DNA of 33,698 bases, taken from NCBI RefSeq assembly GCF_006345805.1, contig NW_021832114.1, positions 1 through 33,698 of the forward strand, given 5' to 3'. The stretch comes from Octopus sinensis (taxonomy: Eukaryota). Positions 1 to 24,985 of this stretch are shown here, one piece after another (the stretch's first letter is position 1; the number at the start of each line of letters is the position of its first letter). Below the pieces are notes generated by a model. It saw only the letters and a list, made by a program, of their open reading frames with translations. It was not told the DNA's origin and did not search any database. The translations under genes and the position numbers were made by a program.

Positions 1-20
1 GAGGAATGTTACAACAATAA

Positions 21-80
21 GTGTCAGTGTGTAGAATGCAATGTATGCGATGCAGGTTCGATTCCCGGGCGAAGCCATTT
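21..80 (+). other. Degenerate tRNA-like sequence (tRNA pseudogene or SINE head)
   Basis: B-box/T-arm GGTTCGATTCC at 55-65, followed by CGGGCGAAG-CCA-TTT. Upstream gtgtcagtgtgtagaatg resembles a D-arm (tRNA-Gly-like GTTCAGTGGTAGAAT). No recognisable anticodon arm. Followed by (ACAAC)n/(AAG)n. Confidence 0.45.
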
Positions 81-123
81 ACAACACAACAACACAACAA
101 TAAGAAGAAGAAGAAGATTGAAG

Positions 124-147
124 TTTAATATTTCTGGAATATTTATT
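124..147 (-). terminator. Candidate polyadenylation signals of the beta-propeller gene
   Basis: On the minus strand, AATAAA (147-142) overlaps the TAA stop and ATTAAA (129-124) follows it. Confidence 0.4.
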
Positions 148-1609
148 TGTCAAAATAAAAGAAAGCAAAAGATTGACGTCCAAGAATAATTCCAAAAACC
201 ATCAAAGAATTGTCTGAAACATCCAAACCAAGAACTTCAGACACTTCATTATCATCCCCACTGAGGAGTAAATATTTTGGATTATCTTTTAATCCCAGGA
301 TTTCATCATCTTCAGATGTTTCCTCTTCAATATGTCCAGGTATTTCGTAAATATTGTTTATGAAATCTGTTATATAAACACATTCACCAATTATGGTCAG
401 ACGAGGTCTTGGATTATAATTTCCCGGAAAAGAAAACCTTCTTCCTTCTATTCTTATCCTCCTCACCAAAGACTTTTCCCTGAACCATTCCACAAAACAA
501 AAAACTTCCCACCATCCAGACTCCTCCTCCATCTCCCTCCTCAAAACAACAACATCACCAAAAGATGTGACTCCCACACCATCCACCCCTTCATCTCCCT
601 CCAACCTTCCCAATCTCCTCATCTTCCCACGACACACTTCATCTTTACATTTCCCATCTTTGATATCAACCACATCCACATAATAAAGGTCAAAGATGTC
701 GAGGTCATTGCAAAAATAGTAATCCTTGTTGTTTCTCCATTTTCTTTGGTATTCCTCATGTCTCTCTTCTTGAGTTATATCTCTAATATAATGACCACCA
801 CACACGAGTTGATTGTCGTTGTATTTATAAATCCTGTTGTAGTATTTCTCAGTTCTGATGGTTTTTAAACGATGGAGATCCCTGTTAAAGACCCTCATTT
901 CTCTCCCAAAGGCGACAATGAAACATTCCTCTGTCCACCGACATATGTCCAGTGGTGGTCGTTGTTGTTGTTCATGTTGAAGTATGTCCACTGTTGTTGT
1001 TGTTGTTGTTCTGATTAATGTGACACTTTCTCGAAACATCAACACACTCACATTCTCATCTAACTTAATTAGTTTACTATTCAAGTCCCTAATTTCCCTC
1101 AAATCATAATCAACAGGTTCCTCGAATGCAGGAATGGAAAAAGGGACCATTGCTGTCCTATATGGAAGTCTCCTTACTGATATTTCATCAATTCCTGAAT
1201 TATTAATCTCCGCTATGTAATTACCACATCTCACCTTTAATCTACCTTTACCAATTATTTCACCTGATTTACCTCTTCTTCTTCCTCCTCCATCTCCATC
1301 TCCTCCTCTGTATTCCAATTCATTAATTAATTCATTACTGAATATTTCCTTGTTCGTTTCAGATGTAATGGAAGGGAAACGAAGACCAGAATCAAGATTT
1401 AATGACGACACAGATTCCAGAATGTTCACTTGGTCCCCATCAATCTTTATGCAATGACATTCAATCAATTCATTATGTACACACCAGTAAATACCCGCCA
1501 CTTTTCTCCATATTACACCATAAGGGATGAGACTCGACCAAACTTGAGATGTCTGCAAATCTTCTCCTTTCAGATGAAATATTTCTTTCCTTTTAGGAAC
1601 CGTGGCCAT
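143..1609 (-). CDS. Intact 488-codon C-terminal segment (beta-propeller-like modules with Gly-rich linker)
   Basis: Open frame with no disruption from ATG 1609 (context cacataATGG: A at -3, G at +4) to TAA 143. Beta-strand-rich protein-like composition. Confidence 0.65.
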   Translation of the reverse strand: MATVPKRKEIFHLKGEDLQTSQVWSSLIPYGVIWRKVAGIYWCVHNELIECHCIKIDGDQVNILESVSSLNLDSGLRFPSITSETNKEIFSNELINELEYRGGDGDGGGRRRGKSGEIIGKGRLKVRCGNYIAEINNSGIDEISVRRLPYRTAMVPFSIPAFEEPVDYDLREIRDLNSKLIKLDENVSVLMFRESVTLIRTTTTTTVDILQHEQQQRPPLDICRWTEECFIVAFGREMRVFNRDLHRLKTIRTEKYYNRIYKYNDNQLVCGGHYIRDITQEERHEEYQRKWRNNKDYYFCNDLDIFDLYYVDVVDIKDGKCKDEVCRGKMRRLGRLEGDEGVDGVGVTSFGDVVVLRREMEEESGWWEVFCFVEWFREKSLVRRIRIEGRRFSFPGNYNPRPRLTIIGECVYITDFINNIYEIPGHIEEETSEDDEILGLKDNPKYLLLSGDDNEVSEVLGLDVSDNSLMVFGIILGRQSFAFFYFDK

Positions 1610-4600
1610 TATGTGTGATTCTTGTGTAAAACACACCCACCAACTAAACTTGCAACATTTCTGTGACATAGCAACTGGCCATCTTCATCGAATATTTTAA
1701 CATTTCCATTATTGGCTTTTTCACACACAACTGTCTTTCCTTCCTCAGAGACATCAAAATCTTTCACTTGAACAGGACATTCGTCTGTTTGTAAACGAGC
1801 AACCGGGAAGCTGTCTCGATTCACCATAAACAACCCTTCAACATACAATTCATTCCTCCTGGGGCTTCCAACAAACCTTGGTCCTTTACAGTCTATACTG
1901 GAGAAATATACTTTATCTTTATAAATTCTTTCATTTAAAAATATTCTCTTGTATTCCCCTTTCTGGGTCAAACACAAAATGTTTTGATATTCAGGGTAAC
2001 CAAAATATTTCTCCCACTCACCATGAATGTACAAAAAACTGTCATCAATTGTCATCCTGTCAACATCACCAATATAAGCTCTATGTAGTGTCTGACTGAA
2101 TGTAAATATTGACCACCACTGTTGAAGAAAATGATGAATCTCCAGTTGTAGACAATGATGACATCTTCATCAGTAACTTTAATATCCAGGATTCTACCAG
2201 AATAATTTCCATCTTCTCTTCTCCCTATTAATGGTTCAGGTATGTCTATTTTTTTTATTTCCTTCACACTCGAATGTATTTCATCAATATCAACAAAATG
2301 CAAATGTCTTCCATCTCCCTCTTCACTCAAAACCAGTTGATTGTTTGATAAAGAAGCCACACATTCATATTTATTTCTCGTTTTGTAAATTACCAACGAC
2401 AATGGAAACTCCACTTTTAATGTCAACAGTTGGGGTTTATTATCATCAAAAATATCCCTCATCGTAATGACCAGTGTGTTTGACTGCCTTCGACACATTT
2501 TAATATTATAATTAACATTCACTTTGATTGAATCCATAAGGTGACCATCCAATGTGAATATCTTAATGTTTCCATTCTTCCTGTCCCATCCTGCAATCAG
2601 ATTATTTTCAGTAAGAACCAACGTTTAATCTCCGTGGTTCTTCGTCTCCCAAATGTTAGGGAGAGGAATATGTCTGGCTTTATCAGAAACTGTCAGGTCC
2701 TGTAGATATAAAGTGGAAAGACAACATTTCACTGAGAGAAATGTGTCTGGAAAATACATCCACCCGTCGATATAATAATTAAGTTGATTATTAGTAACGA
2801 GATCATAACCAACAAATTCTGATCGTTTATGGCAAACATACGGCTTCTGTCTATCAGAAAACAGACGTTGGTCAATAGATCCACCTTGGAGACTGAGGGG
2901 ACGTTTCACTTGGGACATTAAAACACTGGGACCATCTGATGACCGCCATGACCACCACCACTAATGTCCTTGAAGAAAGCTTCTGTTTTGCTCTGAATCA
3001 CTGGAAACCATACCATCACTACTACTAATACTACCATCACCGCCATGACCACCACCAGCATTCTAGTGTTGTACTGAAAGCTTTTCCCTAGTAACAATTA
3101 ATAGCTTTTCTGTTTTCTTGTCTATGATAATGATTTACAAACACAGGGATATTAATGGTCTTAATTACTCGACTGATTATAATAATTGAGGCTAAAATAT
3201 CTAATTGTGATGGTTTATCACAATAACAAACATTTCACATTCACCCAACTTACACATCCGTACATAAGGCTGCCTTAATGATATACTTCTCACTCTCTTT
3301 GATAGGTTCCGATGACCCTTAATTGTTTCTGTAGGGGTAATGTGACCCCTATATGATTAGAATCCCATCGGACATATATCTGTGGCTGTAGACGGCAGAG
3401 ATAATCTGGACACAATGTCTCCTTCCTCAGAAATGTACAACAAGCAATCATGGTGATGTCAGACACCACAAACTGTCCATTGGACAGTATTACATATTTC
3501 GCCAATGACAAGTTTTGGTCATTCTCCTTTTCTTTGAGTCGTAGTAGATTTAGATTTCTGATAAAAGGATTTTCGTGGGTAAACACAGCCAGGACATCCG
3601 GTCTTGATACTTGTAAAGAAGAACCTGCTGTTGAGTTGAGTGTCCGGGACATAAAGAGTTCCTTGGAAAACGCAATGTGAGGGTGAACAGGGAAAGGCAG
3701 TTCCCACTGCCATTCATTTGTCCATATAGATCGTAACATCTGAGAATAGAGTGTCTCCTGAAGAGAGGACATAGAAATAAAACATTATCAGAGTAGATGT
3801 GATGAGGGTGGCCTAGAATGGAAGGTATTTTGAAAAAGTTCTTCACCACATGTGGAATAAAATACCATTTTATTTTCGTTTCCATCTACGACTACAAAAA
3901 TATTGGAGTTGCAGCAATGCTGACATTATGATGTCCAGAGAAATTCTTTCTGCAATGTCAACTTTATCTTTGTTGATCAAGAGGATATGGACCTCGCTTT
4001 TGTTTTCAGTGGTGGTCACAGCCAGACACTTATTTGATACAATATGACATATTTTCATGTAACCAGTTTGCACCTTTATTAAAGGGCCTTTTCTTAGTTC
4101 AGGACAGGTGATATACTGAAACCCTTTCATTTCAGGATAAAATACAAGGAATCTGTTTGTGTTTATTCTACAACAGAAAGAGAAAGAGGGAATCTCAAGG
4201 AAAATGAATTATTTTGGTTAATTATTTCCCCATTATCAGTGAATAATTAGCTTTCTTGTTTTTGTAAATTATTAATATAGAAGATGTAGACATAGGTAGA
4301 ATATTTGTAATGTTGTAGCATCCTCAATATCAATATAGTCTTTTTTAAAACTGGGGGTATGTAGCTGGTGGGTGTATGACAGTTTGGGCCAAAAGTCTTT
4401 ATCATTTGAATACCATGTGGTTTGCCGCAATAATCTGTAACCAAAAAATGGTATCTTTACCAACAGAAATAGAGCGGCATTTCCTCCAATGTCCCTCCTT
4501 GTTACACCACCTTTAGCTGAAATCCTATAAATTATTTGTCCTGGAGGACATAGAAATAATTTTGGTACAGAGAGAGATTACTTGGGAGGTGCAGAGAGAA

Positions 4601-5655
4601 TGGGTCTCTACCTCCCATAACTGTTGGCCATCCAGTTTGTAACAGATTACTCTGTTGATGCTGGCGCGAATGTAATTACAAGTATATTCTGGACCCCTAC
4701 AGCAATATCTGTAGGGTTTCTTTGTAATAATAAATTGATAGTTAATGGTATTATCCTCCCAATCAAATTGGTAAACTGTTTTACCAAACATTTCTACACC
4801 TATAAGGGTAGAATCTTCCAAGTAACTCACCATATGTAACCCCAACTGTATCTTTTGATCTTGAAGGTTTTGGGGCTGATAATAAGAATCATTTCTTGGA
4901 AGGGAGGGTTGCCAGAACCATGTCTTCACTGATTCTTGTGAAACTGGTCACAGAAGATGGACAATGGACATCAATTCTGCACTGTCTCTTGTTACTAAAC
5001 TATTATCTGATAATGGTGGGAATATGTCATCACTCCCTCCTCTATAATGACAATATGGATATTATTGGGATTTCTTCAAATTCTCCAGATTCTCAATATC
5101 TGCATCTCTGGTCACAACTGACTGAAGAGGCCGAAATTTTGATTATTTTTGGTGGCTTCAATGGTTTTGTGTTTGTCTTGTAGAATATTTCTTTGTATAT
5201 AGTGTTCCAGGAACAATTTAGTTTTCCAAAAATTATAAATTCTGATTGTAATCTTTTTTTTTAATGTCTTTTGTCAGAATTTCTATTCTCTGTGTAAAAT
5301 GTTTTAGAAAAGTATTTTCATCCATTCCTATTCTTTTTAAAAAAGTACATATTTCTTTCGAGAATTTATCAACAAATCAATTTGTCCGCATAGGCATTGA
5401 ATGTTGTATAGAATATGTGTTTGTCGAAAACACTCGTTTTTAATTATTTCCAGTTTTTAGGGTCTCCTTTATGTCTTTTGTTTTGTTGTTGGCTGAGATG
5501 AAGCTCGTTTCTCGGACATTTCTCTCCTTGAACCGTCATCTCTCAATATTTACACTTTTCTTCTCAATCCTTCTTCATCCCATTTTGGTGTTGAGTAACT
5601 CAAAGCCCTTTTCTGAGGATATACTTTCCTAAAGTATTTTCAGTTGGTCTTCCAT
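143..5655 (-). pseudogene. Frameshift-disrupted intronless gene for a large multi-module NHL-like beta-propeller protein (TRIM/NHL-like C-terminal modules); pseudogene or indel-rich assembly of a functional gene
   Basis: Manual frame-walking links the ORFs 4525-4929, 4272-4463, 3870-4130, 3550-3885, 3290-3772, 2625-2918, 2052-2621, 1609-2055 and 143-1669 through +/-1 shifts. Recurrent blade motifs: ICYKLDGQQLWE, NKMVFYSTCGEELF, LRCYDLYGQ.EWQWE, VTLPLQKQLRVI, NGNIKIFTLDGHL, NGNVKIFDEDGQL, GGVCFTQESHIMAT. ATG at 5655 lies 7 nt after a splice acceptor. Confidence 0.7.
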
Positions 5656-5662
5656 AGTGAAT

Positions 5663-5692
5663 CTGTAAAGAAATATAAGGAAAACATTTAGC
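5663..5692 (-). promoter_or_regulatory. 3' splice acceptor upstream of the propeller CDS
   Basis: Minus strand reads gctaaatgttttccttatatttctttacAG|attcactATG: branch-point-like motif, polypyrimidine tract, CAG. Confidence 0.6.
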
Positions 5693-6860
5693 TTGTGAAA
5701 ATATTAAAGTTTCAGGGAGATGATGTTTGCTTCATTTGAAAAACACAAAACAAAACATTTATGTATTTCTGTCAGTGAATTAATCTTGTCTAATTAATAT
5801 TTAAACAACTTATTACAATCTATTCTAAGATGTCTTAATAAGTTTCATTAATTACATGGAGTCTAAATTTAGAAATAATTATTTTCACTGGAAATGATAT
5901 TTGCTCTCAACATCACAAGAAATAGTCATGTGTGGCTTAGATTTATTTAACGATAATTAGTCAAAGAGATCCCCTGCTTAAAAGCCACTCAAATAACGAG
6001 ACACTAAGCTGTAGAGAAAATTAACTTTAATTGGTGTACATGCTATATTATGTCCCAACACACAGCAATCATGTTCAAACTTCGTTAACATGGAACAATT
6101 AGCAAAACATAGACTTTATTATGTTTCATAGACATTTGTCAGATACAAGACAGACTGCAACATTTTGCTAGTTAGATGGAATATAAAGTTACTAATGATT
6201 ATATGTACTGGAAATGATGGGACAGTCATGGTGGCTTGGTTTCCATCATATTACTTGATTAACAGATACCCATAAAGCTGGAGATGAAACTGTTCTTAAC
6301 CTGACAAATGCTGTAAATCTCTCAACATTTCAATATAATCCACACAATTATCATACACAACATTGATTAACTCAGAAGCTTATCCAAAGATGGGCTTTCA
6401 TATAATCACATGATAGACAGCATGTTGAGGGATCGTTATTTATTGTTGCTGATTGAGATCATAAAGATGGTTAATGAATAAGCCAATTAATAAGGTAGGT
6501 TCATCTAATTATCTTTAATATAAGGGACAATGTTTGGGTAGCAATGAGAAAGATGTGTTTGTATGAAAAAGGGGTTTGGCAGGTGAAGTGTGTTTTGTTT
6601 GTGTCAGGTGAGGAGTTATAACTTGGTGTAGTTTTATTATGAAGTATTGGGGGTTTAATGAGGTGGATTAGGAAATATTGGTGGGGGTGTTAATGACATT
6701 GTGGTGACCCATCATTATCAGAATGATCCTCCACCGCCTCCTTGGTCTATGAAATAATGACTGTTTACTCTATTGCCCCCAGGAGGAATGAAAAATAAAA
6801 GAGACCTTCTTCCGGATACACATACATAATATTGTATATATATACACATACATATATATT

Positions 6861-7295
6861 GTAAGCATTTTTAGTGAGTTATAGCAAAAAATGCATTAAA
6901 ATGGAATAAAATATGATGGTAATTTTTTTTTTAAATCGTTGACTCATCATAGACATTTTTCGAGAGTTACTTCCCTTATATAATAGCGAAAAATGCATTA
7001 AAATGGAATAAAAAATGATGGTAAATTATTTTTAAAATCGTAGACTCATCGTAGACATTTTTAGAGAGTTACTTCCCTTATATAATAGAGAAAAATGCAT
7101 TAAAATGGAATAAAAAATGATGGTAAATTATTTTTAAAATCGTAGACTCATCGTAGATGCGCGCTAATACCCAGAAGGGCTCGATATGAATCACAACTAT
7201 AAGATACCCGGTTACACTGCACCGCAAAATGTGGGAGTAGTTAGGAATCTAAATCGTAGGAGACAGACACACAACCTTACTTTTATAAATAAAGA
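6861..7295 (-). mobile_element. Non-autonomous Helitron-like element, copy 1, with internal ~102-bp tandem repeats
   Basis: The minus-strand 5' end A|TCTTTATTTATAAAA fits an AT target with a TC start, followed by gtgtgtctgtc. About 220 bp are shared with copy 2. No CTRR 3' end is seen. Confidence 0.55.
6886..7157. repeat. Tandem repeat, 102-bp period, ~2.7 units
   Basis: atgcattaaaatggaataaaa recurs at 6891, 6993 and 7095. Confidence 0.9.
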
Positions 7296-7296
7296 T

Positions 7297-7814
7297 TTGT
7301 GCAACAACTAAAACATTCGGTTGTTCAAATTGTTTGCACAGGAAACCTGCCCTGTGTGGCGGTTTTTGCCGTTTTTGTGGATCTGTTTCAGCTTTTTTAG
7401 CCATTTCTGTTTTGGCGACTTCAAGCCATGAAGTTGTTGTTCTAAAAGAACGCTGGTCTCCTTCACAACGCATTACGACGTTGATTTCCTTACACTCCCT
7501 TCCCCACAGCTTCACGAGGGAGGAAGAAGAAGTGGAGAAGAAGCAACACATGTGCAGGTGTGAGCGTGGACGCCAACTCCGCTGCCATCGACACACGAAA
7601 ATATATGCATTAAAATGGAATAAAAAATGATGTTAAATTATTTTTAAATCGTAGACTCATCGTAGACGCGCGCTAATACCCAGATGGGCTCGATATGAAT
7701 CGCGACTATAAGATACCCGAATTTGGTTTAACTGCACCGCAAAATGTGGAGAGTAGTAGGAATCTAAATCGAAGGGGACAGACACTCACACAACTACAGT
7801 TTTATATATATAGA
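7297..7814 (-). mobile_element. Non-autonomous Helitron-like element, copy 2, head-to-tail with copy 1
   Basis: The minus-strand 5' end is A|TCTATATATATAAAA. 7600-7814 is highly similar to 7090-7295, with a different interior at 7297-7600. Confidence 0.55.
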
Positions 7815-8039
7815 TATGAAAAGGAGTGGCTGAGTGTTGGGGAGAGAATCGGTAGGGCCAGTAACATCCCTAGTTTCATTGGAAGAATTGGTGAAGAGAA
7901 GAGATTTACTGCCAATCTTTGTCACAGCAGTAAGATAGTAGAGTAAAAAGAAGAAGAGAGAGTGATTGAGAGATGAAAGATAGAGGGGGGGGTGATAGGG
8001 GCATGGCAGTAGGGACTCAAGGTCCGAGAGTTGACACTC

Positions 8040-8092
8040 ATCAAACTGGTTTTTTGGAGGTCTGGAATACACCTCCAAAGAACCAGTTTGAT
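8040..8092. repeat. 22-bp inverted repeat with 9-nt loop
   Basis: atcaaactggttttttggaggt / acctccaaagaaccagtttgat, with one U-G position. Confidence 0.9.
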
Positions 8093-8193
8093 AAATGCTA
8101 ATAAACGCGAAATTTCGGATCTTGGGTCAGTTTGTTACTTCTGCTAAATATTTATATATATATATTTTTAATTCAAAATCAAAATCAAGACGA

Positions 8194-8473
8194 CAAAATC
8201 AATGGAAATTGTAGCTGTGATACCAGTGCCGGTGGCACATAAAAAGCACCATCTGATCGTGGCCGTTTGGCAGCCTCGTCTGGCACCTGTGTCGGTGGCA
8301 TGTAAAAAGCACCCACTACACTCACGGAGTGGTTGGCGTTAGGAAGGGCATCCAGCCATAGAAACTTTGCCAGATCAGACTGGGCCTGGTGCAGCCTTCT
8401 GGCTTCCCAGACCCCAGTTGAACCGTCCAACCCATGCTAGCATGGAAAGCGGACGCTAAATGATGATGATGAT
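8194..8473 (+). mobile_element. RTE-tailed SINE-like repeat (2 internal ~63-bp modules)
   Basis: gtgccggtggcac.taaaaagcacc modules, then ggttggcgttaggaagggcatccagc, then aacccatgctagcatggaaa..ggacg.taaa(tga)n tail. Four or more copies occur in the window. Confidence 0.75.
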
Positions 8474-8699
8474 ATAATATACATATATACCTTCACATAC
8501 CCATGTATAAATATTTGTGTCCATGTATGTTATAGCTATGAATCAATGAACGACAAAAGACAAGAGTTACGTAGACACCTTCATTAGCTTCCAGCTGTTT
8601 CTGCTACAGGAAGCAGTGAACTCGAGCTGAGTGTGTGTGCGCGTAGTTGTCTGTGCATTTGTTTATGTTTGCAATCTCTTTTAAGTTGCTCCAGGCAAG

Positions 8700-9085
8700 A
8701 AAACATCTGTCAACCAATCACCCCCACCTTGGAAGGACATGGGAAATAAGAACTTTTGTTCTTGCAAAATGGTTTTGGGTGAGCAATAGGAAGGCTGTCT
8801 GTCTGTAAAACAAGGCTACAATAATATATTCACCTAACCCATGCTAGCATACAAAGTCAGATGTGCAATCAAAACATAAGTAAACCCATGTTTATGCATT
8901 CATATACTCTTATGCATGCATAAACACACACACACACGTGTATGTGTGCATCTGGTTGTTAAGAAGATCATCCAGCTGTAGAAATCTTGCCAAATCTTTC
9001 ATGGAGCTCAGCAATGTCCTCTGGTTCACTGCTTCCTCGTCAACTGTCCTACCCATGCCAGTTAGGGAAAATGGATGTGAAACCT
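8700..9085 (+). mobile_element. Two older, diverged 3' fragments of the RTE-tailed repeat
   Basis: aggaaggc..tctgtaaaa..aacccatgctagcat at ~8785-8850 and catccagctgtagaaatcttgcc..cccatgccag..ggaaaatggatg at ~8965-9080. Confidence 0.5.
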
Positions 9086-9156
9086 TTATAATACATCAGG
9101 TGGTGTATTTTCTTTTCTGTATTTTCCTTCTAATAATTTGTTTTGTTTCTTGCCAG

Positions 9157-9323
9157 GTTCTCGTGAGTTCCACTCAGTCAAGTCTATGACTATACTCGAT
9201 GAGGGTCACCAATCTTCAGCTGGTTTCAAGCAAGAGGAATATTTCCCCAAGTTCTTCCAACATGAACAGCACAATGGTTGGATATGTTTTCTGGTGGAAC
9301 ACTGCAAACAAACGACTCTGTTT
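9157..9323 (+). other. Candidate exon start: either a 6-nt microexon (9157-9162) or a 167-nt exon (9157-9323)
   Basis: Branch-like CTAAT 9130-9134, polypyrimidine tract, TGCCAG acceptor ending 9156. Donor GTGAGT at 9163 or GTATGA at 9324. One frame is open across 9157-9323. Confidence 0.35.
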
Positions 9324-9390
9324 GTATGACGTGACATTTGTTTATAATTCGCAGCAGATGTCAAGACAAGGAGAACATGAGCAGACATAT

Positions 9391-9440
<50 letters not shown>

Positions 9441-9496
9441 CATACACATACATGTACAAATGTAGATATGCATACATGAATATACACACACATGTA

Positions 9497-9657
9497 TATA
9501 CCATAGGCTTATCAGTTCCATGTACGAAACCCATTCACAAGGCTTGAGTCGACCTGGAACATTAGAAGAAGTAATTTTTTTAAGGTGCTGCAAAGTGGGA
9601 CTGAACCTGAGACCACAAGGTTCTGAAGTGAATTCTTAACCATACAGCCATGCCCAA
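9497..9657 (-). mobile_element. tRNA-derived SINE family A (CORE-like), diverged 5' part
   Basis: Reverse complement carries the ggttcagtcccac B-box-like head and matches the copies at 26862-27255 and 30304-30701. Confidence 0.65.
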
Positions 9658-9680
9658 ATTTTTTTGGTAATATTTTGAAG

Positions 9681-9905
9681 ATAATAATAATCCTTTCTAC
9701 TATAGGCATAAGACCTGAAATTTTGGGTGTGGGGGGGTTAATTGATTATGTCACCCCCCAGCCCCTAACTGGTTCTTATTTTATCAATCCCAAAAGGACG
9801 AGGGGCAAAATCAACCTTGGTGGAATTTGAACTCAAAATGTAAACTTGGAAGAAATGATTGCAAAGTATTTTGTCTGGCATTTTTGTAAAAATTCTGCTT
9901 GTTCA

Positions 9906-9941
<36 letters not shown>

Positions 9942-10226
9942 GAAGAAGAAGAATATCGATAAACTATAACAATAACAACATCAATAATAATAATATTAGC
10001 AGCAGCAGCAAAAACAACAACAACAACAGCAATGATTCTTTTATGTTTTTTTAATATAATAAAAATGATTTCAAGTTTTGGCACAAGGCCAGCAAGTTCA
10101 AGGAAGGGTCCAGTCTATTACACTGACCCCAGTACTCAACTAGTACTAATTTATCGATCTGAAAAGGATGAGAGGCTAAGTTGACCTTGGTGGAATTTGA
10201 ACTCAGAATGTAGTGGCAGATGAGTC

Positions 10227-10268
<42 letters not shown>

Positions 10269-10471
10269 GCTTCAATTTTAACAGAAGGCCAGCTTGTTCT
10301 GGGGAGCAGGTAAATTGATTACATCGACTCGAGAACTCAAAAGGTACTTATTTTATGACCCCGAAAGGATAAAGGTTGATGTCGGCAAAATTTGAACTCA
10401 GAACGTAAAGGCAAACAAATAGCTGCCTAGCATTTTGCCCAGAATGCTAACGATTCTGCCAGCTCACCACC
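9681..10471 (-). mobile_element. Three tandem copies of tRNA-derived SINE family B (9681-9908, 10066-10226, 10266-10471)
   Basis: Each has gaatttgaactc (B-box GTTCAAATTC on minus) and a cacaaggcc/ataagacc tail. The copies are separated by (AAT)n/(AAC)n. Confidence 0.75.
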
Positions 10472-10721
10472 CAAACAATAGTAATAGTAATTAATAATAA
10501 TGATAGTAATAGTAATTAATAATAATGATAACAAACCCTTCCTTTCCTATTTTATATCCTTCATATGTCCTTCTCTTCCTTTACTTTCTTCTCTCTCTCT
10601 TTCTCTCATTCCCTCTCTCTTTTCAATATCAACTTCAACATTTATTTCCCTTTTACATAAAATGTATATATTATGTGTGTGTGTGTATTTATATAGTGTA
10701 CGTGTATATATGTATATATAT

Positions 10722-10930
10722 TCTTTATTCTTGTACTTGTTTCAGTCATTTCACTGTGGCCATACTGGAGCACTGCCTTTAGTCAAAACAAATTGACCCA
10801 GGACTTATTCTTTGTAAGCCTAGTACTTATTCTATTGGTATCTTTTGCTGGACTTTTAAGTTACAGGGATGTAAACACACCAACTTCGGTTGTCAAGCAA
10901 TGTTAGTGGGACAAAAATAGAGACACAATT
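10722..10930 (-). mobile_element. SINE family A, 3' half
   Basis: gtttcagtcatttcactgtggccatactggagcac..ggacttattctttgtaagcctagtacttattct matches the other family A copies. Confidence 0.8.
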
Positions 10931-12760: not shown

Positions 12761-13045
12761 TTATGCAGTGAATGACTTCATCGTTAATGTGTCGGACATT
12801 GAACGAAGCAAGGAAGGAGAATGCTTTAGAGTAGCTAACCCTGCCAGAAATAACAGCCAAATCTCCTTCTAGTCAGATTCTATTGTATAGGAATGTATAT
12901 ATATGTATTGAGCCAATGACGAGAGCTCTGTATGGCTCGGTGCATCAGCATGGCCTCAGCTCTGAGCTGAAACTAGAAAAAAAATATAAAATATATGTAT
13001 ATATATATATATATGTGTGTGTGGTGTTATATATGTATGTATATT

Positions 13046-13232
13046 GCTGAGCTGGCAGAATCGTTAGTACACCAGGCAAAATGCTTAGCAGTGTTTTCAT
13101 CTGACTTTATGTTCTGAGTTCTAATTCCATGGAGACTCACATTCAGGGACGATGGCCACTGGGACTGATGCAATCAAAACTGGAGCATTCCACGAACCTG
13201 CTGGCCTTGTGCCAAAATTTGAATCCAATATT
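13046..13232 (+). mobile_element. SINE family B, internally deleted
   Basis: gagctggcagaatcgttag head and ggccttgtgccaaaatttgaa tail. Confidence 0.7.
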
Positions 13233-16326: not shown

Positions 16327-16718
16327 TCTTTGCCTGTTGGCACAAGGCCTGGAATTCTAGTAGAGGCAGCTAATTGACTCCATCGACCCTGCGTGTGAAC
16401 GATTCTTCCACCTCACCGGCTTATACACATACCATACTGTAACTCTCTCTCTCTCTGTCACTCTCTCCTTCTCTATCTTTCTATTCATCTATTAATTATG
16501 TAATAATTCTCATTTTACATTTAGCACAAGGACTGCAATTATTGTGGGCACCTAATCGATTACATTGACCCTATTACTTGATTTGTGCTCAATTCATGAC
16601 CCTGGAACGATTGGATGCAAAGCAACCCTCACCAGAATTTGAACTCACAATGTGAAACTACGAAACGGCGTGAAGCATTTCCTCTGGCATGTGAGGGATT
16701 CTGCCAACACGCTGCCTT
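16327..16718 (-). mobile_element. SINE family B, diverged copy (16501-16718) plus 3' fragment (16327-16390)
   Basis: agaatttgaactc B-box, gattctgccaac head, gcacaagg tails. Confidence 0.6.
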
Positions 16719-17335
16719 ATGAATACACACACACACACACATACTATAACTACAATAATATATATCATATATAGTTATATTAATACATATATGCTTCTAG
16801 AAATAGCAGTCAAATCTCCTAAAATCACACATCATGCTGTGTTATGTCTGAGGAAATTAACTGCATTGTAGGAAGGCTCGTTGGAATTACCAGCCAATTA
16901 AAGCTCTAATTACAGTGTAATTTCTAATGCATGTATATATGAGGTCATACAGGATCTCTATCTGGTAGCTAGATCAATGTTGATTCAACCCCTCCCCTTA
17001 AAATTTCTAGCATTCTCCATAAATCAGGAAAAAAAATCTATTCTTTCTGAGGGCAGGGAGTCGCTTTTTGTATATCTGTGTTTATAGTTGTATTGATATT
17101 TTCTCTTGTAGAAATAGCAGTCAAATCCCTTTAAATCACACATTATACTGAAATATTAGCATTGTGACTCGGCTTGTTAGAAATAACATCCAAATCTCCC
17201 TCTGAAATTAAACATAGGAGATGAAAGAGAGAGCAGAATGAGAGAGAAAACAGTGAGAGAGGGAGGAGGACATATAATGATTGAGTGAGAAAGAAGGAGG
17301 GATTGCTGGAATAAATACAAGGCTTAACAAAAATA

Positions 17336-18500
17336 TGAGGGGTGTTCATTAAAGATGTTCCCTCACCCACCCACTTCCAGTTATTGCAGGAAACGGAACT
17401 TGTACAGGTATAGTCATACCTGTCTCTCCATGTCCCATTGTAAATTGCAGCTTTCCACTCGGATTCGTTTGTCTTTTGCGGCTGCTGAAGTCGACTTAGC
17501 TGTTATAATGGAGGCAGTTGAATGCAGATCAGGGATCAGGTTCTTATACTTGGAAGGTCGTACACCAAATGATGAGATGAAAGAAAGCACTTATGGTGAC
17601 AATGCACCATCATACAACATAGTCAAGCACTGGCATCACCTGTTCAAATGGGGCTGGACATTGGTGGAAAAATGTTGGACATCCACATTCTGCCATTGAT
17701 GATGATGCCATCCATAAAGTGGAAGCTGCCATTTTGGAGGATCACCACAGAACTTTATGGCAACTAACCCAAAAAGTGAAGATAAGCTTAGGATCTGTGG
17801 GAAAAAAACTCATTTACAACCATTTGTACATGTTATCAGCACAATGGATTCCCCAGATGCTCACATCTTTTCAAAAGCAGGAATGGGTCAATTGTTCCAA
17901 GGCCCTTTTGGCAATGTGTCAAGAAAATGAGGAGGTTTTTTTTTGGCAGACTTATCCCACAGGATGAAGCATGGGTCCATCACAATGGTCCTGAGACTAA
18001 AGTCCAGTCAAAACAATGGAAGTATGATAACTCATCACCTCCAAAGAAGGGTCGTGTCCAGCCCTGACCAGGCAAGGTGATGCTCAATCTTTTTGGACCA
18101 GCACAGATTAGTGATGTTGGATTTTCTGGCAAAGGGCTCCACAATTAATGGGGCACATCATGCTTCTCTGCCGCAGAAATTGCAGGATGCCATCAAAGCA
18201 GAGAAGCATGGCATGCTGACCAAAGGAGTCTGCTTCCTCAAGACAACAACTCAGTTCACAAAAACATGTTGCCCAGATGGAAGCACACTCCTGTGGCTAT
18301 GAAATCCTTACTCTCCTGACCTCGCACCATCTGACTCCCACCTCTTTCCGACCATGAAATCTTTTTTGAAGGGGAAGAAATTTTCAGATGACAAACTTAT
18401 TTCTGAGGTAAAGCCTTGACTCTAGATGCAGCCTACCAACTTCTACAGATGAGGGATACACAACTGCATAAAAGAGACAGGAGAAGTGTGACACCACTTC
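17336..18500 (+). mobile_element. Decayed mariner (DD34D) transposon, near full-length transposase pseudogene
   Basis: Left end TA|tgagggg. Remnant motifs: WIPQMLT (WVPxxL), QDEAWVHH..PETKVQSKQW, GKVML, QDNNSVHK, PYSPDLAPSDSHLF. Many stops and frameshifts. Right TIR not found. Confidence 0.85.
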
Positions 18501-20425: not shown

Positions 20426-20444
<19 letters not shown>

Positions 20445-20464
<20 letters not shown>

Positions 20465-22157
20465 AATTATTGTATACAGTGCTCAAGTGCACCACAACTT
20501 GTCAGAAAGTGCGTATAAAGTATATGCAGTAATGTAAAAATGTCTGGAAAGTGAACAATGTATGAGTCAGAGACATGCTTGTGTGTGTATGGAGGGGAGA
20601 AAGATCAGGTGTAGTGTTGGCGAATCTCAGGAAGCATGGAAGTTTTGAAGGATGCAGTGCTCCGACAACTAACAACTGATGCCGGCAGTTTATTCCATGC
20701 TTCAGCAACTCTCAGCGTGAAAAAATGTTTCCTGAAGTCATGGGAGCTGTGCTGTTTTCTTACTTTGTAAATATGTCCATGGGTGGAGTTTGAAAAGGTG
20801 CTCAGAGTTATTGTTTGTACGATGGTTGATAATTTTATGGATGTCTGCCAAGTCAGCTTCCAGACGTCGGAGTTTCAATGTGTCTATGCCCAGGGAAGTA
20901 AGGCGTTCAGGATATGGCAAATGCCTGATGGAGGGTATTCTTTTGGTTGCACGTCGCTGAACAGCTTTCAGACGATTGATATCCTGGGCAAGATAGGGGT
21001 TCTAGACCGGTGATGCAAATTCCAGGTGAGGTCTTACCATAGCTATATAAAGCCGCAGATAGATAGCCGGAGAGCGGCTCACAAAGGATTTGGTGAGTGA
21101 TGCCAAGACACCCTCAGCCTTCTTGACAATTTCAGCGATGTGTTTTGTCCAACGCAAATCACTGTCGACAATAACACCCAGGTCACGTTCACATGAAGAC
21201 TTTTTGAGACTAGTGTTGTGGAGGGAGTAGGTGGACGCTGGGTTTCTACTCCCAAAATGCATGGTGGTACATTTGTCCACAGCCAGCTTGAGTTGCCAGT
21301 CCATGATCCACTGCTGCATTGTGTCCAGGTCTGCTTGCAATAGAGATCTATAGTTTACAGGATTTGACCTCTTTATTTCGAGGTACAGCTTGATGTCATC
21401 TGCATATTTCAGCACTGTGGCATTCTTTAAGTAGGCATCTATGTCATTAACATATGCAACAAATAAAAGGGGGCCAAGAACAGATCCCTGTGGTACACCA
21501 GATGTCATCTCATAGGGCGAAGAGTGCTGTCCTAGAACTGTGACAACCTCTTTTCGGCTGAAAATAAAGGACTTCAACCAGTTATAGAGTTCGTCTCTTA
21601 CACCCAACGCAGAAAGCTTCACCATAAGTCTTTTGTGTGGCACAGAGTTAAAAGCCTTAGCGAAGTCCAGGTAAACAACATCCACCCAGGATCCACGATC
21701 AGTGATTTGGGTAACGTCCTCAAGAAACTCGATGAGTTGATTACAGCAGCTGGAGTTAGGAATAAATCCGAATTGTGACGGCTGGATGAGGCTGTGAGAC
21801 TTCCAGAAGTTCCAGAGGGTTTCTCTGATACAGGATTCCATCAGTTTGGCGATGCAGCTAGTAAGACTGATGGGGCAATAGTTGACAGGCGATGTGCGGT
21901 CGCCTTTTTTTAACAGAGGGATGACACTGGCAGTTTTCCACTGTTCTGGAGTAACACCATTGTCGAGACAGAATTGGAAGAATAGAAAAAGTTGGCTTAG
22001 AAGAAAGTACCCACCGCGTTTGAGAAGTAGGTATGTAACACCATCGAGACCAGGAGAGGCATAATTGCGTTTATTCTTAAGGTGGCGTTGCAGCATTGCT
22101 GGTGTAAATTGCATAGTAGATATAGAGTCCGATGTCAGTGGTGATGAAGATGGAATT
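20445..22157 (-). mobile_element. CR1-clade LINE, 5'-truncated, RT domain nearly intact, (ATT)n tail
   Basis: ORF 22114-21002 has QFGF, YLDFAKAFNSVPH, GVPQGSVLGPLLF and KYADD. One TAG at 21002 (expected W of VWNP), then VQRRATK..L.Y.ERL..L. An 11-bp deletion lies near 20779. Confidence 0.95.
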
Positions 22158-22159
22158 AC

Positions 22160-23705
<1,546 letters not shown>

Positions 23706-24985
23706 ATAAAGGAGTTTCACCTTTACCAGTATTATATTACTCTTCAAAAAACAGGTGGATGAATGAACACTTGTTCACAGAATGGTTCATCCAAGAATTT
23801 GTGCCAGCTGAACAAAAGCGCTCTCACAAATGTGGTAAACCTGATTCAAAGTGCCTGCAGCTATTACACAATTGCAGAGCACATCCTCACGACACAAAAC
23901 TAGTGTCATCGTGTGGGAATGTTTTTACGTGCTACTTACCACCGAATGTGACATCTCTCATTCAACCTCTGGAGCAAGGGATTATTTGGAGCTTAAAACG
24001 TTTCTACAGAAATGATTTCAAGATGAATATGATAAATAGCAATGTTAGTATAGGCAATTTCCAGTGCAATTTTACCATCAAAGATGCCATTTTTTCCCTT
24101 GCAAGTGCATGGAATCAGGTTTGAGCAGGCACATTAACAGAAGCGTGGGGGAAATTATACCCAGTGTCTTGTGCTCCTAAAGTGAAAGAAGCAGAAAATG
24201 TATCTGGAGTACAAAATATTCTTGAAAGTAGAGGATTTCCAACCAAACACACCGTTCTTCAATCACTTGATGCAAATGGAATTGAAATGTGGGTTTGACA
24301 AGATGAAGAAAACACTGAACAATGTCCTGAAGACAATATTGGTCATGAAATTAGTGACAGCAATGGCTCCCATTCGAGTGAATCTTATGTAAATGGCCAA
24401 GAACACTCTAATGAGGAAATATCATGGGATAAGATGACAGAAAAGTCTATGGAGATAGTGATAAAATTTCTAGAAAGAAATCCTTACTTTAGTGACAACT
24501 ATTTTTGGCAAGCAATGTCACTTTGAAAGGATATGATCATAAAGAGACTACAGCACGAGGAAATAGTGGAGTTTGGTGATCGCTTGAGGAATGCAATGGC
24601 AGACCCCGTCAGTTTGATAAATGAAGACAGAAACAAAAGTGAAGAAGCTCATTCAATGAACGCATAAAAGTATTCTACATTGGTGATTGGTTGTTAAATG
24701 CAGATAATTTATGTAATAAATACCTAACAATTAACATTTATTTAATTAGAAAAAAAATTTGAAAGTAAATTAACATTATTTAATATTAATTTATTTTCAA
24801 ACTTTTTTCCCCCCAAGCAATGATATTTAACAATTCTTTAAAATATATAATGTGCTCATCTTAATATATACATTAAATACTAGAAGGGGTACCCGGAAAT
24901 GTAAGAGGAAATATTTTCGCACCCTTATGCATTTTCTTCCCATAACTTGAACATAGCACACGTTCGAATTAGAGGAGTTCTACTG
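23706..24985 (+). mobile_element. Tigger/pogo (DDE_1, CENP-B/Jerky-like) transposon, 5'-truncated, with right TIR
   Basis: [21 protein letters not shown] (LLDN), [33 protein letters not shown]. Right TIR reverse complement cagtagaactcctctaattcgaac at 24962-24985 is followed by TA. Confidence 0.9.

What the first reader, a model, noticed from the sequence alone, without database searches (positions are those of the whole stretch)
143..5655. Hidden ~1,800-aa intronless multi-propeller gene with a strongly polar pattern of single-base indels
Seen: nine short ORFs join into one protein-like chain when the frame is shifted by +/-1 at each break. Several shifts fall in homopolymers: missing G in ggtggg(g)tgtgt near 1636, missing A in caaa(a)tgaa near 3718, missing A in aagaaa(a)tga at 4892-4894. 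The chain reads as a helical N-terminus, then at least four and possibly about six NHL-like propeller modules separated by Gly-rich linkers (GGGHGGDG near 3050, RGGDGDGGG near 1295). I infer many shifts in 1640-5655, but the last 488 codons have none. Known: molluscs carry expanded, poorly annotated B-box/NHL-like families, and several serial propellers in one exon would be an unusual architecture. Inference, three options: (a) a functional giant gene corrupted by local long-read consensus errors; (b) a pseudogene whose 3' module is kept open by gene conversion with paralogues; (c) a 5'-decayed gene whose last 488 codons were rescued as a new gene from the strong-Kozak ATG at 1609. Frameshifts appear to outnumber clean in-frame stops, which favours (a), yet nearby TEs show few indels.
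Basis: partly seen in the sequence, partly recalled or inferred. Interest (0 to 1): 0.75.

Follow-up and report, generated by a model that had tools for sequence, protein, structure and literature searches.

The report
Octopus propeller gene garbled by assembly errors
The window holds a real copy of an octopus-only family of giant, intron-free, multi-propeller proteins, but the one-sided spray of single-base gaps that breaks it is most likely a patch of poor genome-assembly consensus, because it runs on into the non-coding DNA upstream of the gene.

Summary
On the minus strand, 5655→143, nine open stretches of at least 100 aa are collinear with an Octopoda-restricted family of about 1,660-1,910-aa proteins annotated only as "uncharacterized". 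One family member is an intact single-exon 1,674-codon gene.

Aligned with eight paralogous units, the window copy has 65 private small indels. Of these, 43 are 1-bp deletions. Sixty-two lie between 5694 and 2621, about one per 50 bp. Only two frameshifts (2078, 1637) lie in 2620→143, and there is at most one nonsense substitution.

The polarity is not a property of the gene:
- The same private deletions continue at full density into the non-coding flank 6171-6845 (15 versus 0 in three other copies).
- Private substitutions are roughly uniform along the unit, so the indel:substitution ratio is about 1:1 in the zone.
- The nearest paralogue does not change at the boundary.

It argues against gene conversion (b) and against a rescued 3' gene (c).

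A β-propeller fold is supported. Residues 170-508 of the 508-aa ORF model at pLDDT about 80-96 and match WD40-type propellers. An NHL assignment is only faint. Whether the copy is functional remains open. Ordinary finding, low to moderate interest.

The parts
143..5655 (-). Footprint of one copy of an Octopoda-specific giant intronless multi-propeller gene, about 1,790 codons if read in the family frame. It is broken as assembled.
   Evidence: Collinear tblastn to P0017, P0020, P0013 and P0004. DNA alignment to eight paralogous units at 84-99% identity.
5653..5655 (-). Conserved start codon (ACTATGGAAGACC).
   Evidence: Aligned with the ATG of the L006, L001, L002a and L008 copies, whose products begin MEDQTENTL….
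146..1669 (-). Intact 508-codon 3' ORF. It contains the C-terminal β-propeller, residues about 170-508, which is window about 1162→146.
   Evidence: the ORF listing. 89-95% identical to O. vulgaris models. The AlphaFold2 model has pLDDT about 80-96 over residues 170-508, with four-strand blades. Foldseek matches WD40-type propellers at E about 1e-7.
2621..5694 (-). Indel-dense zone inside and just upstream of the CDS: 62 window-private small indels, mean spacing 50 bp, mostly 1-bp deletions.
   Evidence: Nine-sequence MAFFT alignment. Other copies have 2-8 private small indels over the whole unit.
6171..6845 (.). Non-coding upstream flank with the same private indel pattern.
   Evidence: Four-way alignment: the window has 15 private small indels (12 deletions) in 593 columns, and L007, L003 and L006 have 0.
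8151..8950 (.). Further upstream flank with a thinner excess of private indels. The upper edge of the zone is not resolved.
   Evidence: The window has 7 private small indels versus 0-2 in L007, L006 and L005. Pairwise against L007, 7800-10900 shows 37 small indels to 142 mismatches.
2078..2078 (-). Isolated private 1-bp deletion (frameshift) in the otherwise clean 3' part.
1637..1637 (-). Isolated private 1-bp deletion (GGTGG-GTGTG). It separates the 185-aa stretch from the 508-codon ORF.
3033..3056 (-). Gly-rich linker GGGHGGDG. It lies in a length-variable low-complexity segment, about 97 extra bp shared only with L006.
1283..1309 (-). Gly-rich linker RGGDGDGGG, just upstream of the well-modelled C-terminal propeller.
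1607..1609 (-). Internal Met codon with a Kozak-like context. It is a family-conserved residue, not a new start.
   Evidence: …ESHIMATVPK… is present in the paralogues. Context checked.

Best explanation
The window carries one more copy of a recently amplified, Octopoda-restricted family of intronless proteins of about 1,700-1,800 aa. The architecture is a hydrophilic N-terminus followed by several β-propeller domains separated by Gly-rich linkers.

The striking 5'-heavy spray of single-base indels is not gene decay. It is a contiguous patch of low-accuracy assembly consensus. Such a patch could arise from long-read consensus that short-read polishing did not correct in a multi-copy region. 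The patch starts inside the coding sequence at about 2621 and runs upstream through the start codon into non-coding DNA, to at least 6845 and probably about 8950.

The 508-codon 3' ORF is open simply because it lies outside that patch. Whether the underlying copy is intact or carries a couple of true lesions (1637, 2078) cannot be decided from the sequence.

Shown:
- family membership
- the indel census, its spectrum and its extent
- the propeller fold of the C-terminal domain

Inferred:
- that the indels are technical
- that the platform was noisy long reads
For: 1. The window copy has 61 strictly private small indels (47 deletions, 14 insertions), against 2-8 in each of eight paralogous units. 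Fifty-nine of them fall in the 5' 3.5 kb of the alignment.
2. With a slightly laxer rule there are 65 events, of which 43 are 1-bp deletions. Twenty-nine of the 43 fall in runs of 2 or more bases, where 51% of positions lie. The insertions are mostly 2-5-bp tandem duplications.
3. Private substitutions are nearly uniform, at 8-12 per 500 columns in the zone and 3-9 outside it. The indel:substitution ratio is therefore about 1:1 in the zone and about 1:17 outside.
4. The same pattern continues in non-coding flank. In 6171-6845 the window has 15 private indels and three other copies have 0. In 8151-8950 the count is 7 versus 0-2.
5. A LINE copy at 20443-21538 is normal. It is 95% identical to a LINE copy in L001, with only 3 gap openings in 1,108 bp.
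6. There are only 0-1 nonsense substitutions in about 1,790 codons, against about 4 expected from 71 private substitutions.
7. The nearest paralogue does not change across the boundary. Identity to L006 is 92-99% throughout.
8. The public O. vulgaris chromosome assembly that holds the sibling copies was built from 27.5x ONT R9.4.1 reads with NextDenovo and polished with HyPo. Unpolished patches are expected in multi-copy DNA for this kind of data (PMC10700109).
9. Family membership and architecture rest.
Against: - No reads could be examined, so none of the indels is directly shown to be an error.
- The source assembly and platform of the window are unknown. The 508-aa product is not on record in the gene-position index.
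- Equally repetitive sibling copies in the public assemblies lack such a patch, so a local cause has to be assumed, such as low coverage or a failed polishing block.
- One third of the 1-bp deletions (14 of 43) are not in homopolymers.
- The two frameshifts in the clean part, and the 1-4 private breaks in every sibling copy, could be genuine. In that case the copy would be a pseudogene regardless of the patch.
Confidence: 0.75

Rival explanations
1. Genuine, heavily decayed pseudogene: the indels are real germline mutations that accumulated in a dead copy and its flank.
For: - Every sampled sibling copy also carries 1-4 private frame breaks.
- dN/dS among close copies is about 1 or above in the 3' half.
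- Synonymous and non-synonymous private changes in the window copy match the neutral expectation: 11 synonymous observed against 14.9 expected.
- Natural indels are also deletion-biased and favour short runs.
Against: - An indel:substitution ratio of about 1:1 at only about 2% private substitution is far from the roughly 1:10 or lower usual for neutral DNA (from general knowledge).
- The zone ends abruptly inside the gene, yet substitution divergence and the nearest paralogue stay the same across the edge.
- There are 0-1 nonsense substitutions.
- Almost all events are 1-2 bp, with no private deletions of 6-40 bp in the zone.
Confidence: 0.12
2. One reading: an old pseudogene whose 3' 2.6 kb was recently overwritten by gene conversion from an intact paralogue, which erased its lesions.
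For: Similarity among paralogues is mosaic. There are two sequence classes over alignment columns about 1000-2000 (95-97% against 74-78% identity) and two 5'-end classes. Exchange between copies therefore does happen.
Against: - There is no jump in identity to any paralogue at about 2621.
- Private substitutions are not depleted enough in the 3' part. There are 35 private substitutions against 2 private indels there, and 61 against 59 in the zone.
- The 5' part is 95-97% identical to its nearest copies, too young to have gathered 20 indels per kb naturally.
- The zone includes non-coding flank.
Confidence: 0.05
3. One reading: the 5' part decayed, and the last about 488 codons survive as a new, shorter gene started from the Kozak-like ATG at 1609.
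For: - The ORF is open from 1669 to 146, and the ATG at 1609 has A at -3 and G at +4.
- The encoded C-terminal propeller models confidently on its own.
Against: - The Met is an internal residue conserved across the family.
- Residues 1-165 of the ORF are modelled as largely disordered. In full-length members they belong to the preceding region.
- dN/dS in this part is about 1 or above among close copies, and on the window's own terminal branch, measured over the whole aligned unit, synonymous changes are at the neutral expectation. This gives no sign of new purifying selection.
- Openness is explained by lying outside the error patch.
- No transcript data are available.
Confidence: 0.03

Closest known systems
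Octopoda 'uncharacterized protein LOC…' family, e.g. O. bimaculoides XP_014776406.1 (1,712 aa), O. vulgaris CAI9728090.1 / O. sinensis XP_029641499.1 (1,674 aa) and Argonauta hians GAB1597371.1 (1,913 aa)
   Same: - Collinear homology over the whole 5.5 kb.
- Same start, same Gly-rich linkers and same C-terminal …FAFFYFDK end.
- Intronless.
- The nearest copies are 89-95% identical in protein and lie in a cluster on O. vulgaris OX597841.1 and O. sinensis CM016888.1.
   Different: As assembled, the window copy has about 60 frame breaks. The conserved members are intact ORFs.
NHL-repeat β-propellers (Pfam PF01436; TRIM71, TRIM2/3 and BRAT type)
   Same: - All-β, four-strand-blade propeller modules.
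- The best Pfam match in the family is NHL, in a distant member (P0035).
- A 76-residue stretch of the N-terminal half matches a bacterial NHL-repeat protein 14 times (E 1e-9).
- A family profile touches the TRIM71 NHL domain at E 0.2-0.3.
   Different: - No piece of the window reaches any Pfam threshold, and neither do four full-length members. The best NHL score is 18.5 bits against a cut-off of 20.
- No RING or B-box was found.
- Foldseek ranks WD40-type 7-8-blade propellers first, not NHL.
Multi-propeller scaffolds such as DDB1, Utp21 and IFT-A subunits
   Same: Several β-propellers in one chain. These are the top Foldseek matches for the 882-aa model (E about 1e-11).
   Different: - TM-scores are below 0.25 and the model has a mean pLDDT of only 48.
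- There is no sequence similarity.
- The domain arrangement is not established.
Unpolished long-read consensus patches in hybrid-polished assemblies
   Same: - Private, deletion-biased 1-2-bp indels enriched in short runs.
- The pattern is indifferent to coding and non-coding boundaries.
- The edges are abrupt.
- The locus is multi-copy.
   Different: There is no read-level confirmation and the source assembly is unknown.

Membership tests
Octopoda giant multi-propeller family (uncharacterized LOC proteins) | Collinear homology along the whole protein or unit | tested here: met
   tblastn of P0017, P0020, P0013 and P0004 hits successive frames in order. blastn to L006 covers window 6300→1 in one alignment at 92%.
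Octopoda giant multi-propeller family (uncharacterized LOC proteins) | Single-exon coding sequence of about 1,650-1,800 codons | tested here: met
   The P0030 gene range of 5,025 nt equals 1,674 codons plus a stop, and it translates exactly. P0017 is also single-exon. The window unit aligns without intron-sized gaps.
Octopoda giant multi-propeller family (uncharacterized LOC proteins) | Uninterrupted reading frame | tested here: not met
   About 60 frame-shifting private indels as assembled. This is probably technical for 2621-5655 and undecided for 2078 and 1637.
NHL repeat / TRIM-NHL | Pfam NHL (PF01436) matches above the gathering score | tested here: not met
   No hit for ten window pieces, two L002 ORFs, or P0028, P0030 and P0033. 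P0035 scores 18.5 bits against a cut-off of 20.
NHL repeat / TRIM-NHL | Six-bladed propeller closest in fold to solved NHL domains | tested here: inconclusive
   The C-terminal domain models as a 6-7-blade propeller. The best PDB matches are WD40-type: Fbw7, EED and PALB2. A family profile against PDB sequences gives TRIM71 only at E 0.2-0.3.
NHL repeat / TRIM-NHL | N-terminal RING, B-box and coiled-coil (TRIM) module | tested here: not met
   No RING or B-box Pfam hit in the 726-aa N-terminal ORF of L002 or in full-length members. Helical or coiled-coil character of the first about 190 residues was not modelled.
WD40 propeller | WD40 sequence repeats (Pfam) | tested here: not met
   No WD40 hit in any scan. 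Only a generic fold resemblance was found.
Naturally decayed pseudogene | Nonsense substitutions and indels in proportion to neutral substitution divergence; lesions confined to, or independent of, assembly features | tested here: not met
   0-1 nonsense substitutions against about 4 expected. The indel:substitution ratio is about 1:1 in the zone. The zone crosses into the flank and ends abruptly inside the gene.
Assembly consensus-error patch | Indels contradicted by accurate reads from the same individual | not testable with these tools
   No read data are available. No short-read-derived protein fragments of this locus are in the protein collection.
Assembly consensus-error patch | Private, deletion-biased 1-2-bp indels, spread evenly over coding and non-coding DNA, with normal substitution levels | tested here: met

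The most novel reading that the evidence does not exclude
The whole recently amplified cluster may consist of functional genes rather than pseudogenes. There are dozens of copies on the 29.19-Mb O. vulgaris record OX597841.1 and on O. sinensis CM016888.1.

On this reading, the C-terminal propellers evolve under diversifying selection, as expected of an intracellular recognition or immune-like repertoire. The fragmented annotation of two to three gene models per copy would then be largely a by-product of residual long-read errors.

Evidence that does not exclude this:
- All frame-breaking indels in the eight sibling copies are private.
- Nonsense substitutions are four- to ten-fold rarer than expected: 4-11 observed against about 45 expected.
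- dN/dS is 1.0-2.3 in the 3' half and about 0.4 in the 5' half.
Probability: 0.3. Interest if true: 0.55.

Novelty: new member of a known kind. Interest (0 to 1): 0.3.

Why it matters
There are three practical points.
1. The eye-catching polar decay should not be read as biology such as pseudogene polarity, gene conversion or gene birth. It flags a low-quality consensus stretch of at least 4 kb in the source assembly.
2. It shows how such patches, and sparser residual indels, can shatter long intronless genes into several "hypothetical proteins". That is how this family is annotated in O. vulgaris.
3. The family itself is uncharacterised. It is Octopoda-only, about 1,700 aa, intronless, multi-propeller, heavily amplified on one small chromosome, and possibly under diversifying selection. 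It would merit a proper curated census once accurate (HiFi) assemblies are used.

Tried and rejected
- **Pfam, window pieces:** a scan of ten pieces and of two long ORFs of a paralogue gave nothing significant.
- **Internal repeats:** BLASTP between the N- and C-terminal halves showed no significant internal repeat.
- **Tandem repeats:** Tandem Repeats Finder found none in 1-7000.
- **Profile against PDB:** two family profiles gave nothing significant. TRIM71 NHL appears only at E 0.2-0.3.
- **First AlphaFold2 model:** the 882-aa P0017 model with 17 sequences had a mean pLDDT of only 48, so its Foldseek matches to DDB1-type multi-propellers count only as a generic indication.
- **Source locus:** an exact look-up of the 508-aa product found nothing on record. 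No annotated protein is more than 95% identical to it.
- **Short-read evidence:** a search for protein fragments reading through the 2621-2658 indels gave only four distant NCBI/UniRef hits.
- **Transposable-element idea:** I considered this because the family is multi-copy and intronless and has duplicated 3' fragments. I set it aside because homology between copies extends for variable lengths into the flanks, at least 5 kb upstream for L007. That looks like segmental duplication rather than fixed element ends.
- **Literature:** searches for the family and its LOC identifiers found nothing.
- **Upper edge of the indel zone:** it could not be fixed beyond about 8950, because only one homologous sequence was available there.

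Full report
**What is in the sequence**

The feature lies on the minus strand. Between 5655 and 143 there are nine open stretches of at least 100 aa: 140, 101, 112, 111, 164, 111, 190, 185 and 513 aa. None of the pieces hits a Pfam family, and there is no tandem repeat.

The 513-aa stretch was searched against the large protein collection. It found 23 proteins, all from Octopus vulgaris, O. sinensis or O. bimaculoides. All are annotated "hypothetical" or "uncharacterized", none has Pfam domains, and they are up to 95% identical.

tblastn of the longer models back onto the window hits successive reading frames in collinear order, with frame changes near 1637, 2061-2079 and 2800-2930. The chain is therefore real.

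**The family and its architecture**

I fetched paralogous loci: L001, L003 and L005-L008 from O. vulgaris OX597841.1, and L002 from O. sinensis CM016888.1. The homologous DNA unit spans the whole 5.5 kb and more. L006 aligns to window 6300→1 in a single alignment at 92%.

In those copies the unit is nearly open:
- L003: 918 + 891 aa
- L006: 1,248 + 684 aa
- L005: 472 + 1,353 aa
- L002a: 726 + 70 + 997 aa

An exhaustive HMMER search with the 707-aa N-terminal ORF of L002, and a second word-based search, found intact full-length members of 1,652-1,734 aa in all three Octopus species. They also found 1,913- and 1,925-aa proteins in Argonauta hians.

One of them, P0030, is a single uninterrupted exon of 1,674 codons in O. 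vulgaris. It sits in a 90%-identity cluster with its O. sinensis and O. bimaculoides counterparts.

The "hidden ~1,800-aa intronless gene" is therefore a copy of an annotated but uncharacterised family. I found that family only in Octopoda. I found no paper on the family or its LOC identifiers.

**Fold**

An AlphaFold2 model of the window's own 508-aa ORF, built with a 32-sequence family alignment, gave mean pLDDT 67 and pTM 0.67. Residues about 170-508 score about 80-96 and consist of successive four-strand blades. Foldseek against the PDB returns β-propellers (Fbw7, EED, PALB2, β-TrCP) at E about 1e-7. TM-scores are 0.3-0.57 when normalised by target length.

A model of the 882-aa P0017 was poor (pLDDT 48) but all-β. 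It matched multi-propeller proteins such as DDB1, Utp21 and IFT-A.

Evidence for NHL specifically is faint:
- a sub-threshold NHL hit in P0035, 18.5 bits against a cut-off of 20
- fourteen matches of a 76-residue N-terminal stretch to a bacterial NHL-repeat protein, E 1e-9
- TRIM71 NHL at E 0.2-0.3 for a family profile

No RING or B-box was found. Serial propellers are therefore supported, with two modelled with some confidence. "NHL-like" remains unproven, and "four to six" propellers is plausible from length but was not tested.

**The indel census**

I aligned the window unit with eight paralogous units and counted small indels private to each copy. The window has 61 (47 deletions, 14 insertions). 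The others have 2-8 each.

With a slightly laxer rule there are 65:

| Event | Count |
|---|---|
| 1-bp deletions | 43 |
| 1-bp insertions | 6 |
| 2-bp events | 10 |
| 3-5-bp events | 6 |

Sixty-two of the 65 lie between 5694 and 2621, with a mean spacing of 50 bp. After 2621 there are only 1-bp deletions at 2078 and 1637 and one in-frame 6-bp difference at 1856. The binomial probability of so few in the 3' 2,478 bp is 6e-14.

In the family reading frame the window copy has at most one nonsense substitution. That one sits in a locally misaligned spot near 5440.

The boundary, however, is at about 2621, not 1640.

**Why this is not gene decay**

1. Private substitutions are nearly uniform along the unit, at 8-12 per 500 columns in the zone and 3-9 outside it. 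The zone has about one indel per substitution, while the rest has about one per seventeen. From general knowledge, neutral DNA accumulates roughly one indel per ten or more substitutions. A region only 3-5% diverged from its nearest paralogues cannot have gathered 20 indels per kb naturally.
2. The pattern ignores the gene. In the non-coding flank 6171-6845 the window has 15 private small indels (12 deletions) in 593 aligned columns, and three other copies have none. In 8151-8950 it has 7 against 0-2.
3. The nearest paralogue does not change at the boundary. Identity to L006 is 92-99% throughout. This argues against a gene-conversion tract.
4. Farther away the window is normal. A LINE segment at 20443-21538 is 95% identical to a copy in L001, with 3 gap openings in 1,108 bp, and it keeps a 370-aa RVT_1 ORF.
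5. The spectrum is what noisy long-read consensus produces. It is mostly 1-bp deletions, two thirds of them in runs of 2-5 bases, plus 2-5-bp tandem-duplication insertions.
6. The public O. vulgaris assembly that holds the sibling copies was made from 27.5x ONT R9.4.1 reads with NextDenovo and polished with HyPo (PMC10700109).

My reading is a low-accuracy consensus patch covering at least 2621-6845 and probably reaching about 8950. The 508-codon ORF is open because it lies outside the patch. I put this at about 0.75.

**What stays open**

I could not look at reads, and the window's source is unknown. Its 508-aa product is not on record, and no annotated protein exceeds 95% identity. The protein collection held no short-read-derived fragments of this locus.

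The two frameshifts in the clean part (2078, 1637) occur at the same low density as the private breaks of the sibling copies. They may be true lesions or residual errors.

Several things hint that the cluster may be made of working genes whose annotation is fragmented by residual errors:
- All frame-breaking indels in the siblings are private.
- Nonsense substitutions across the nine copies number 4 by direct count, or 11 by the ancestral-codon method. About 45 are expected if private substitutions fell at random.
- dN/dS by Nei-Gojobori is about 0.4 in the 5' half for deeper comparisons, and 1.0-2.3 in the 3' half among close copies.

The Nei-Gojobori estimate ignores transition bias and rests on few synonymous changes, so I treat this as a lead only.

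- (a) Consensus errors are supported for the indel zone. "Functional" is undecided.
- (b) Not supported, for reasons 1-3 above. Mosaic similarity between copies does show that paralogues exchange sequence.
- (c) Not supported. The Met at 1609 is an internal residue conserved in the family. The first about 165 residues of the ORF belong to the preceding region and model as disordered. There is no sign of renewed constraint.

**Verdict**

This is a real gene copy of a known but uncharacterised, octopod-only family. The polar indel pattern is real in the sequence but most likely technical. The finding itself is of low to moderate interest. The family may deserve curation on accurate assemblies.

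Noticed in passing
L001, L002 (two copies), L003, L005, L006, L007, L008 (paralogous units): Every sampled sibling copy carries 1-4 small frame-breaking indels. All are private to that copy and none is shared. As a result each copy is annotated as 2-3 separate 'hypothetical proteins'. Nonsense substitutions are far rarer than expected, at 4-11 against about 45. This may mean that residual assembly errors fragment the whole family's annotation.
   Followed up: partly
window 143-2620 and the matching 3' half of the paralogues: Nei-Gojobori dN/dS among close copies is 1.0-2.3 in the 3' half (C-terminal propellers). It is about 0.4 in the 5' half for deeper comparisons. This could be diversifying selection or relaxed constraint. 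Synonymous counts are small.
   Followed up: partly
window ~4900-3900 and ~5800-4900 (alignment columns 1000-2000 and 0-1000): Similarity between paralogues is mosaic. The window, L001, L002b, L006 and L008 are 95-97% alike over columns 1000-2000, while L002a, L003, L005 and L007 are only 74-78% identical to the window there. L003, L005, L007 and L002b also have a different 5' end (MEKINEENK…). This suggests recombination or gene conversion between copies.
   Followed up: partly
L002:12428-12785 and 12835-13183; L005:11769-12139, 16619-16967, 17021-17400: Extra copies of only the last ~380 bp of the gene (window 383→1) lie near full copies. One has an open C-terminal fragment ending …FAFFYFDK. 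The origin of these copies is unexplained.
   Followed up: no
window 6178-10900 versus L007:4456-1: Homology with L007 continues at least 5 kb upstream of the gene, interrupted by insertions. The copies therefore spread as segmental duplications, not as an element with fixed ends.
   Followed up: partly
window 2961-3043: The Gly/Ser-rich linker region varies in length. About 97 extra bp (50 + 44 + 3) are shared only by the window and L006.
   Followed up: no
window 21002-22114 (-): Intact 370-aa ORF with a reverse-transcriptase domain (RVT_1, E 3e-34). It is a LINE-type fragment, 95% identical to a copy in L001.
   Followed up: yes
window 23177-24124 (+): An ORF whose C-terminal 135 residues match the DDE_1 transposase domain (E 3.5e-25), i.e. 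a pogo/Tigger-type remnant. It is fused in frame to a long TA/CA microsatellite that reads as YIYIYI.
   Followed up: yes
Protein P0093 (O. bimaculoides, 162 aa): UniRef names this short fragment of the family 'Sema domain-containing protein'. This is an automatic propeller-type label and the only informative name any source gives the family.
   Followed up: no
O. vulgaris OX597841.1 (29.19 Mb) and O. sinensis CM016888.1 (15.1 Mb): Most of the ≥70 family models found lie on these two records, at 8.3, 8.8, 9.6, 10.2, 22.0, 22.2 and 25.1 Mb of OX597841.1. More divergent, conserved members sit singly on larger chromosomes, for example OX597822.1.
   Followed up: partly
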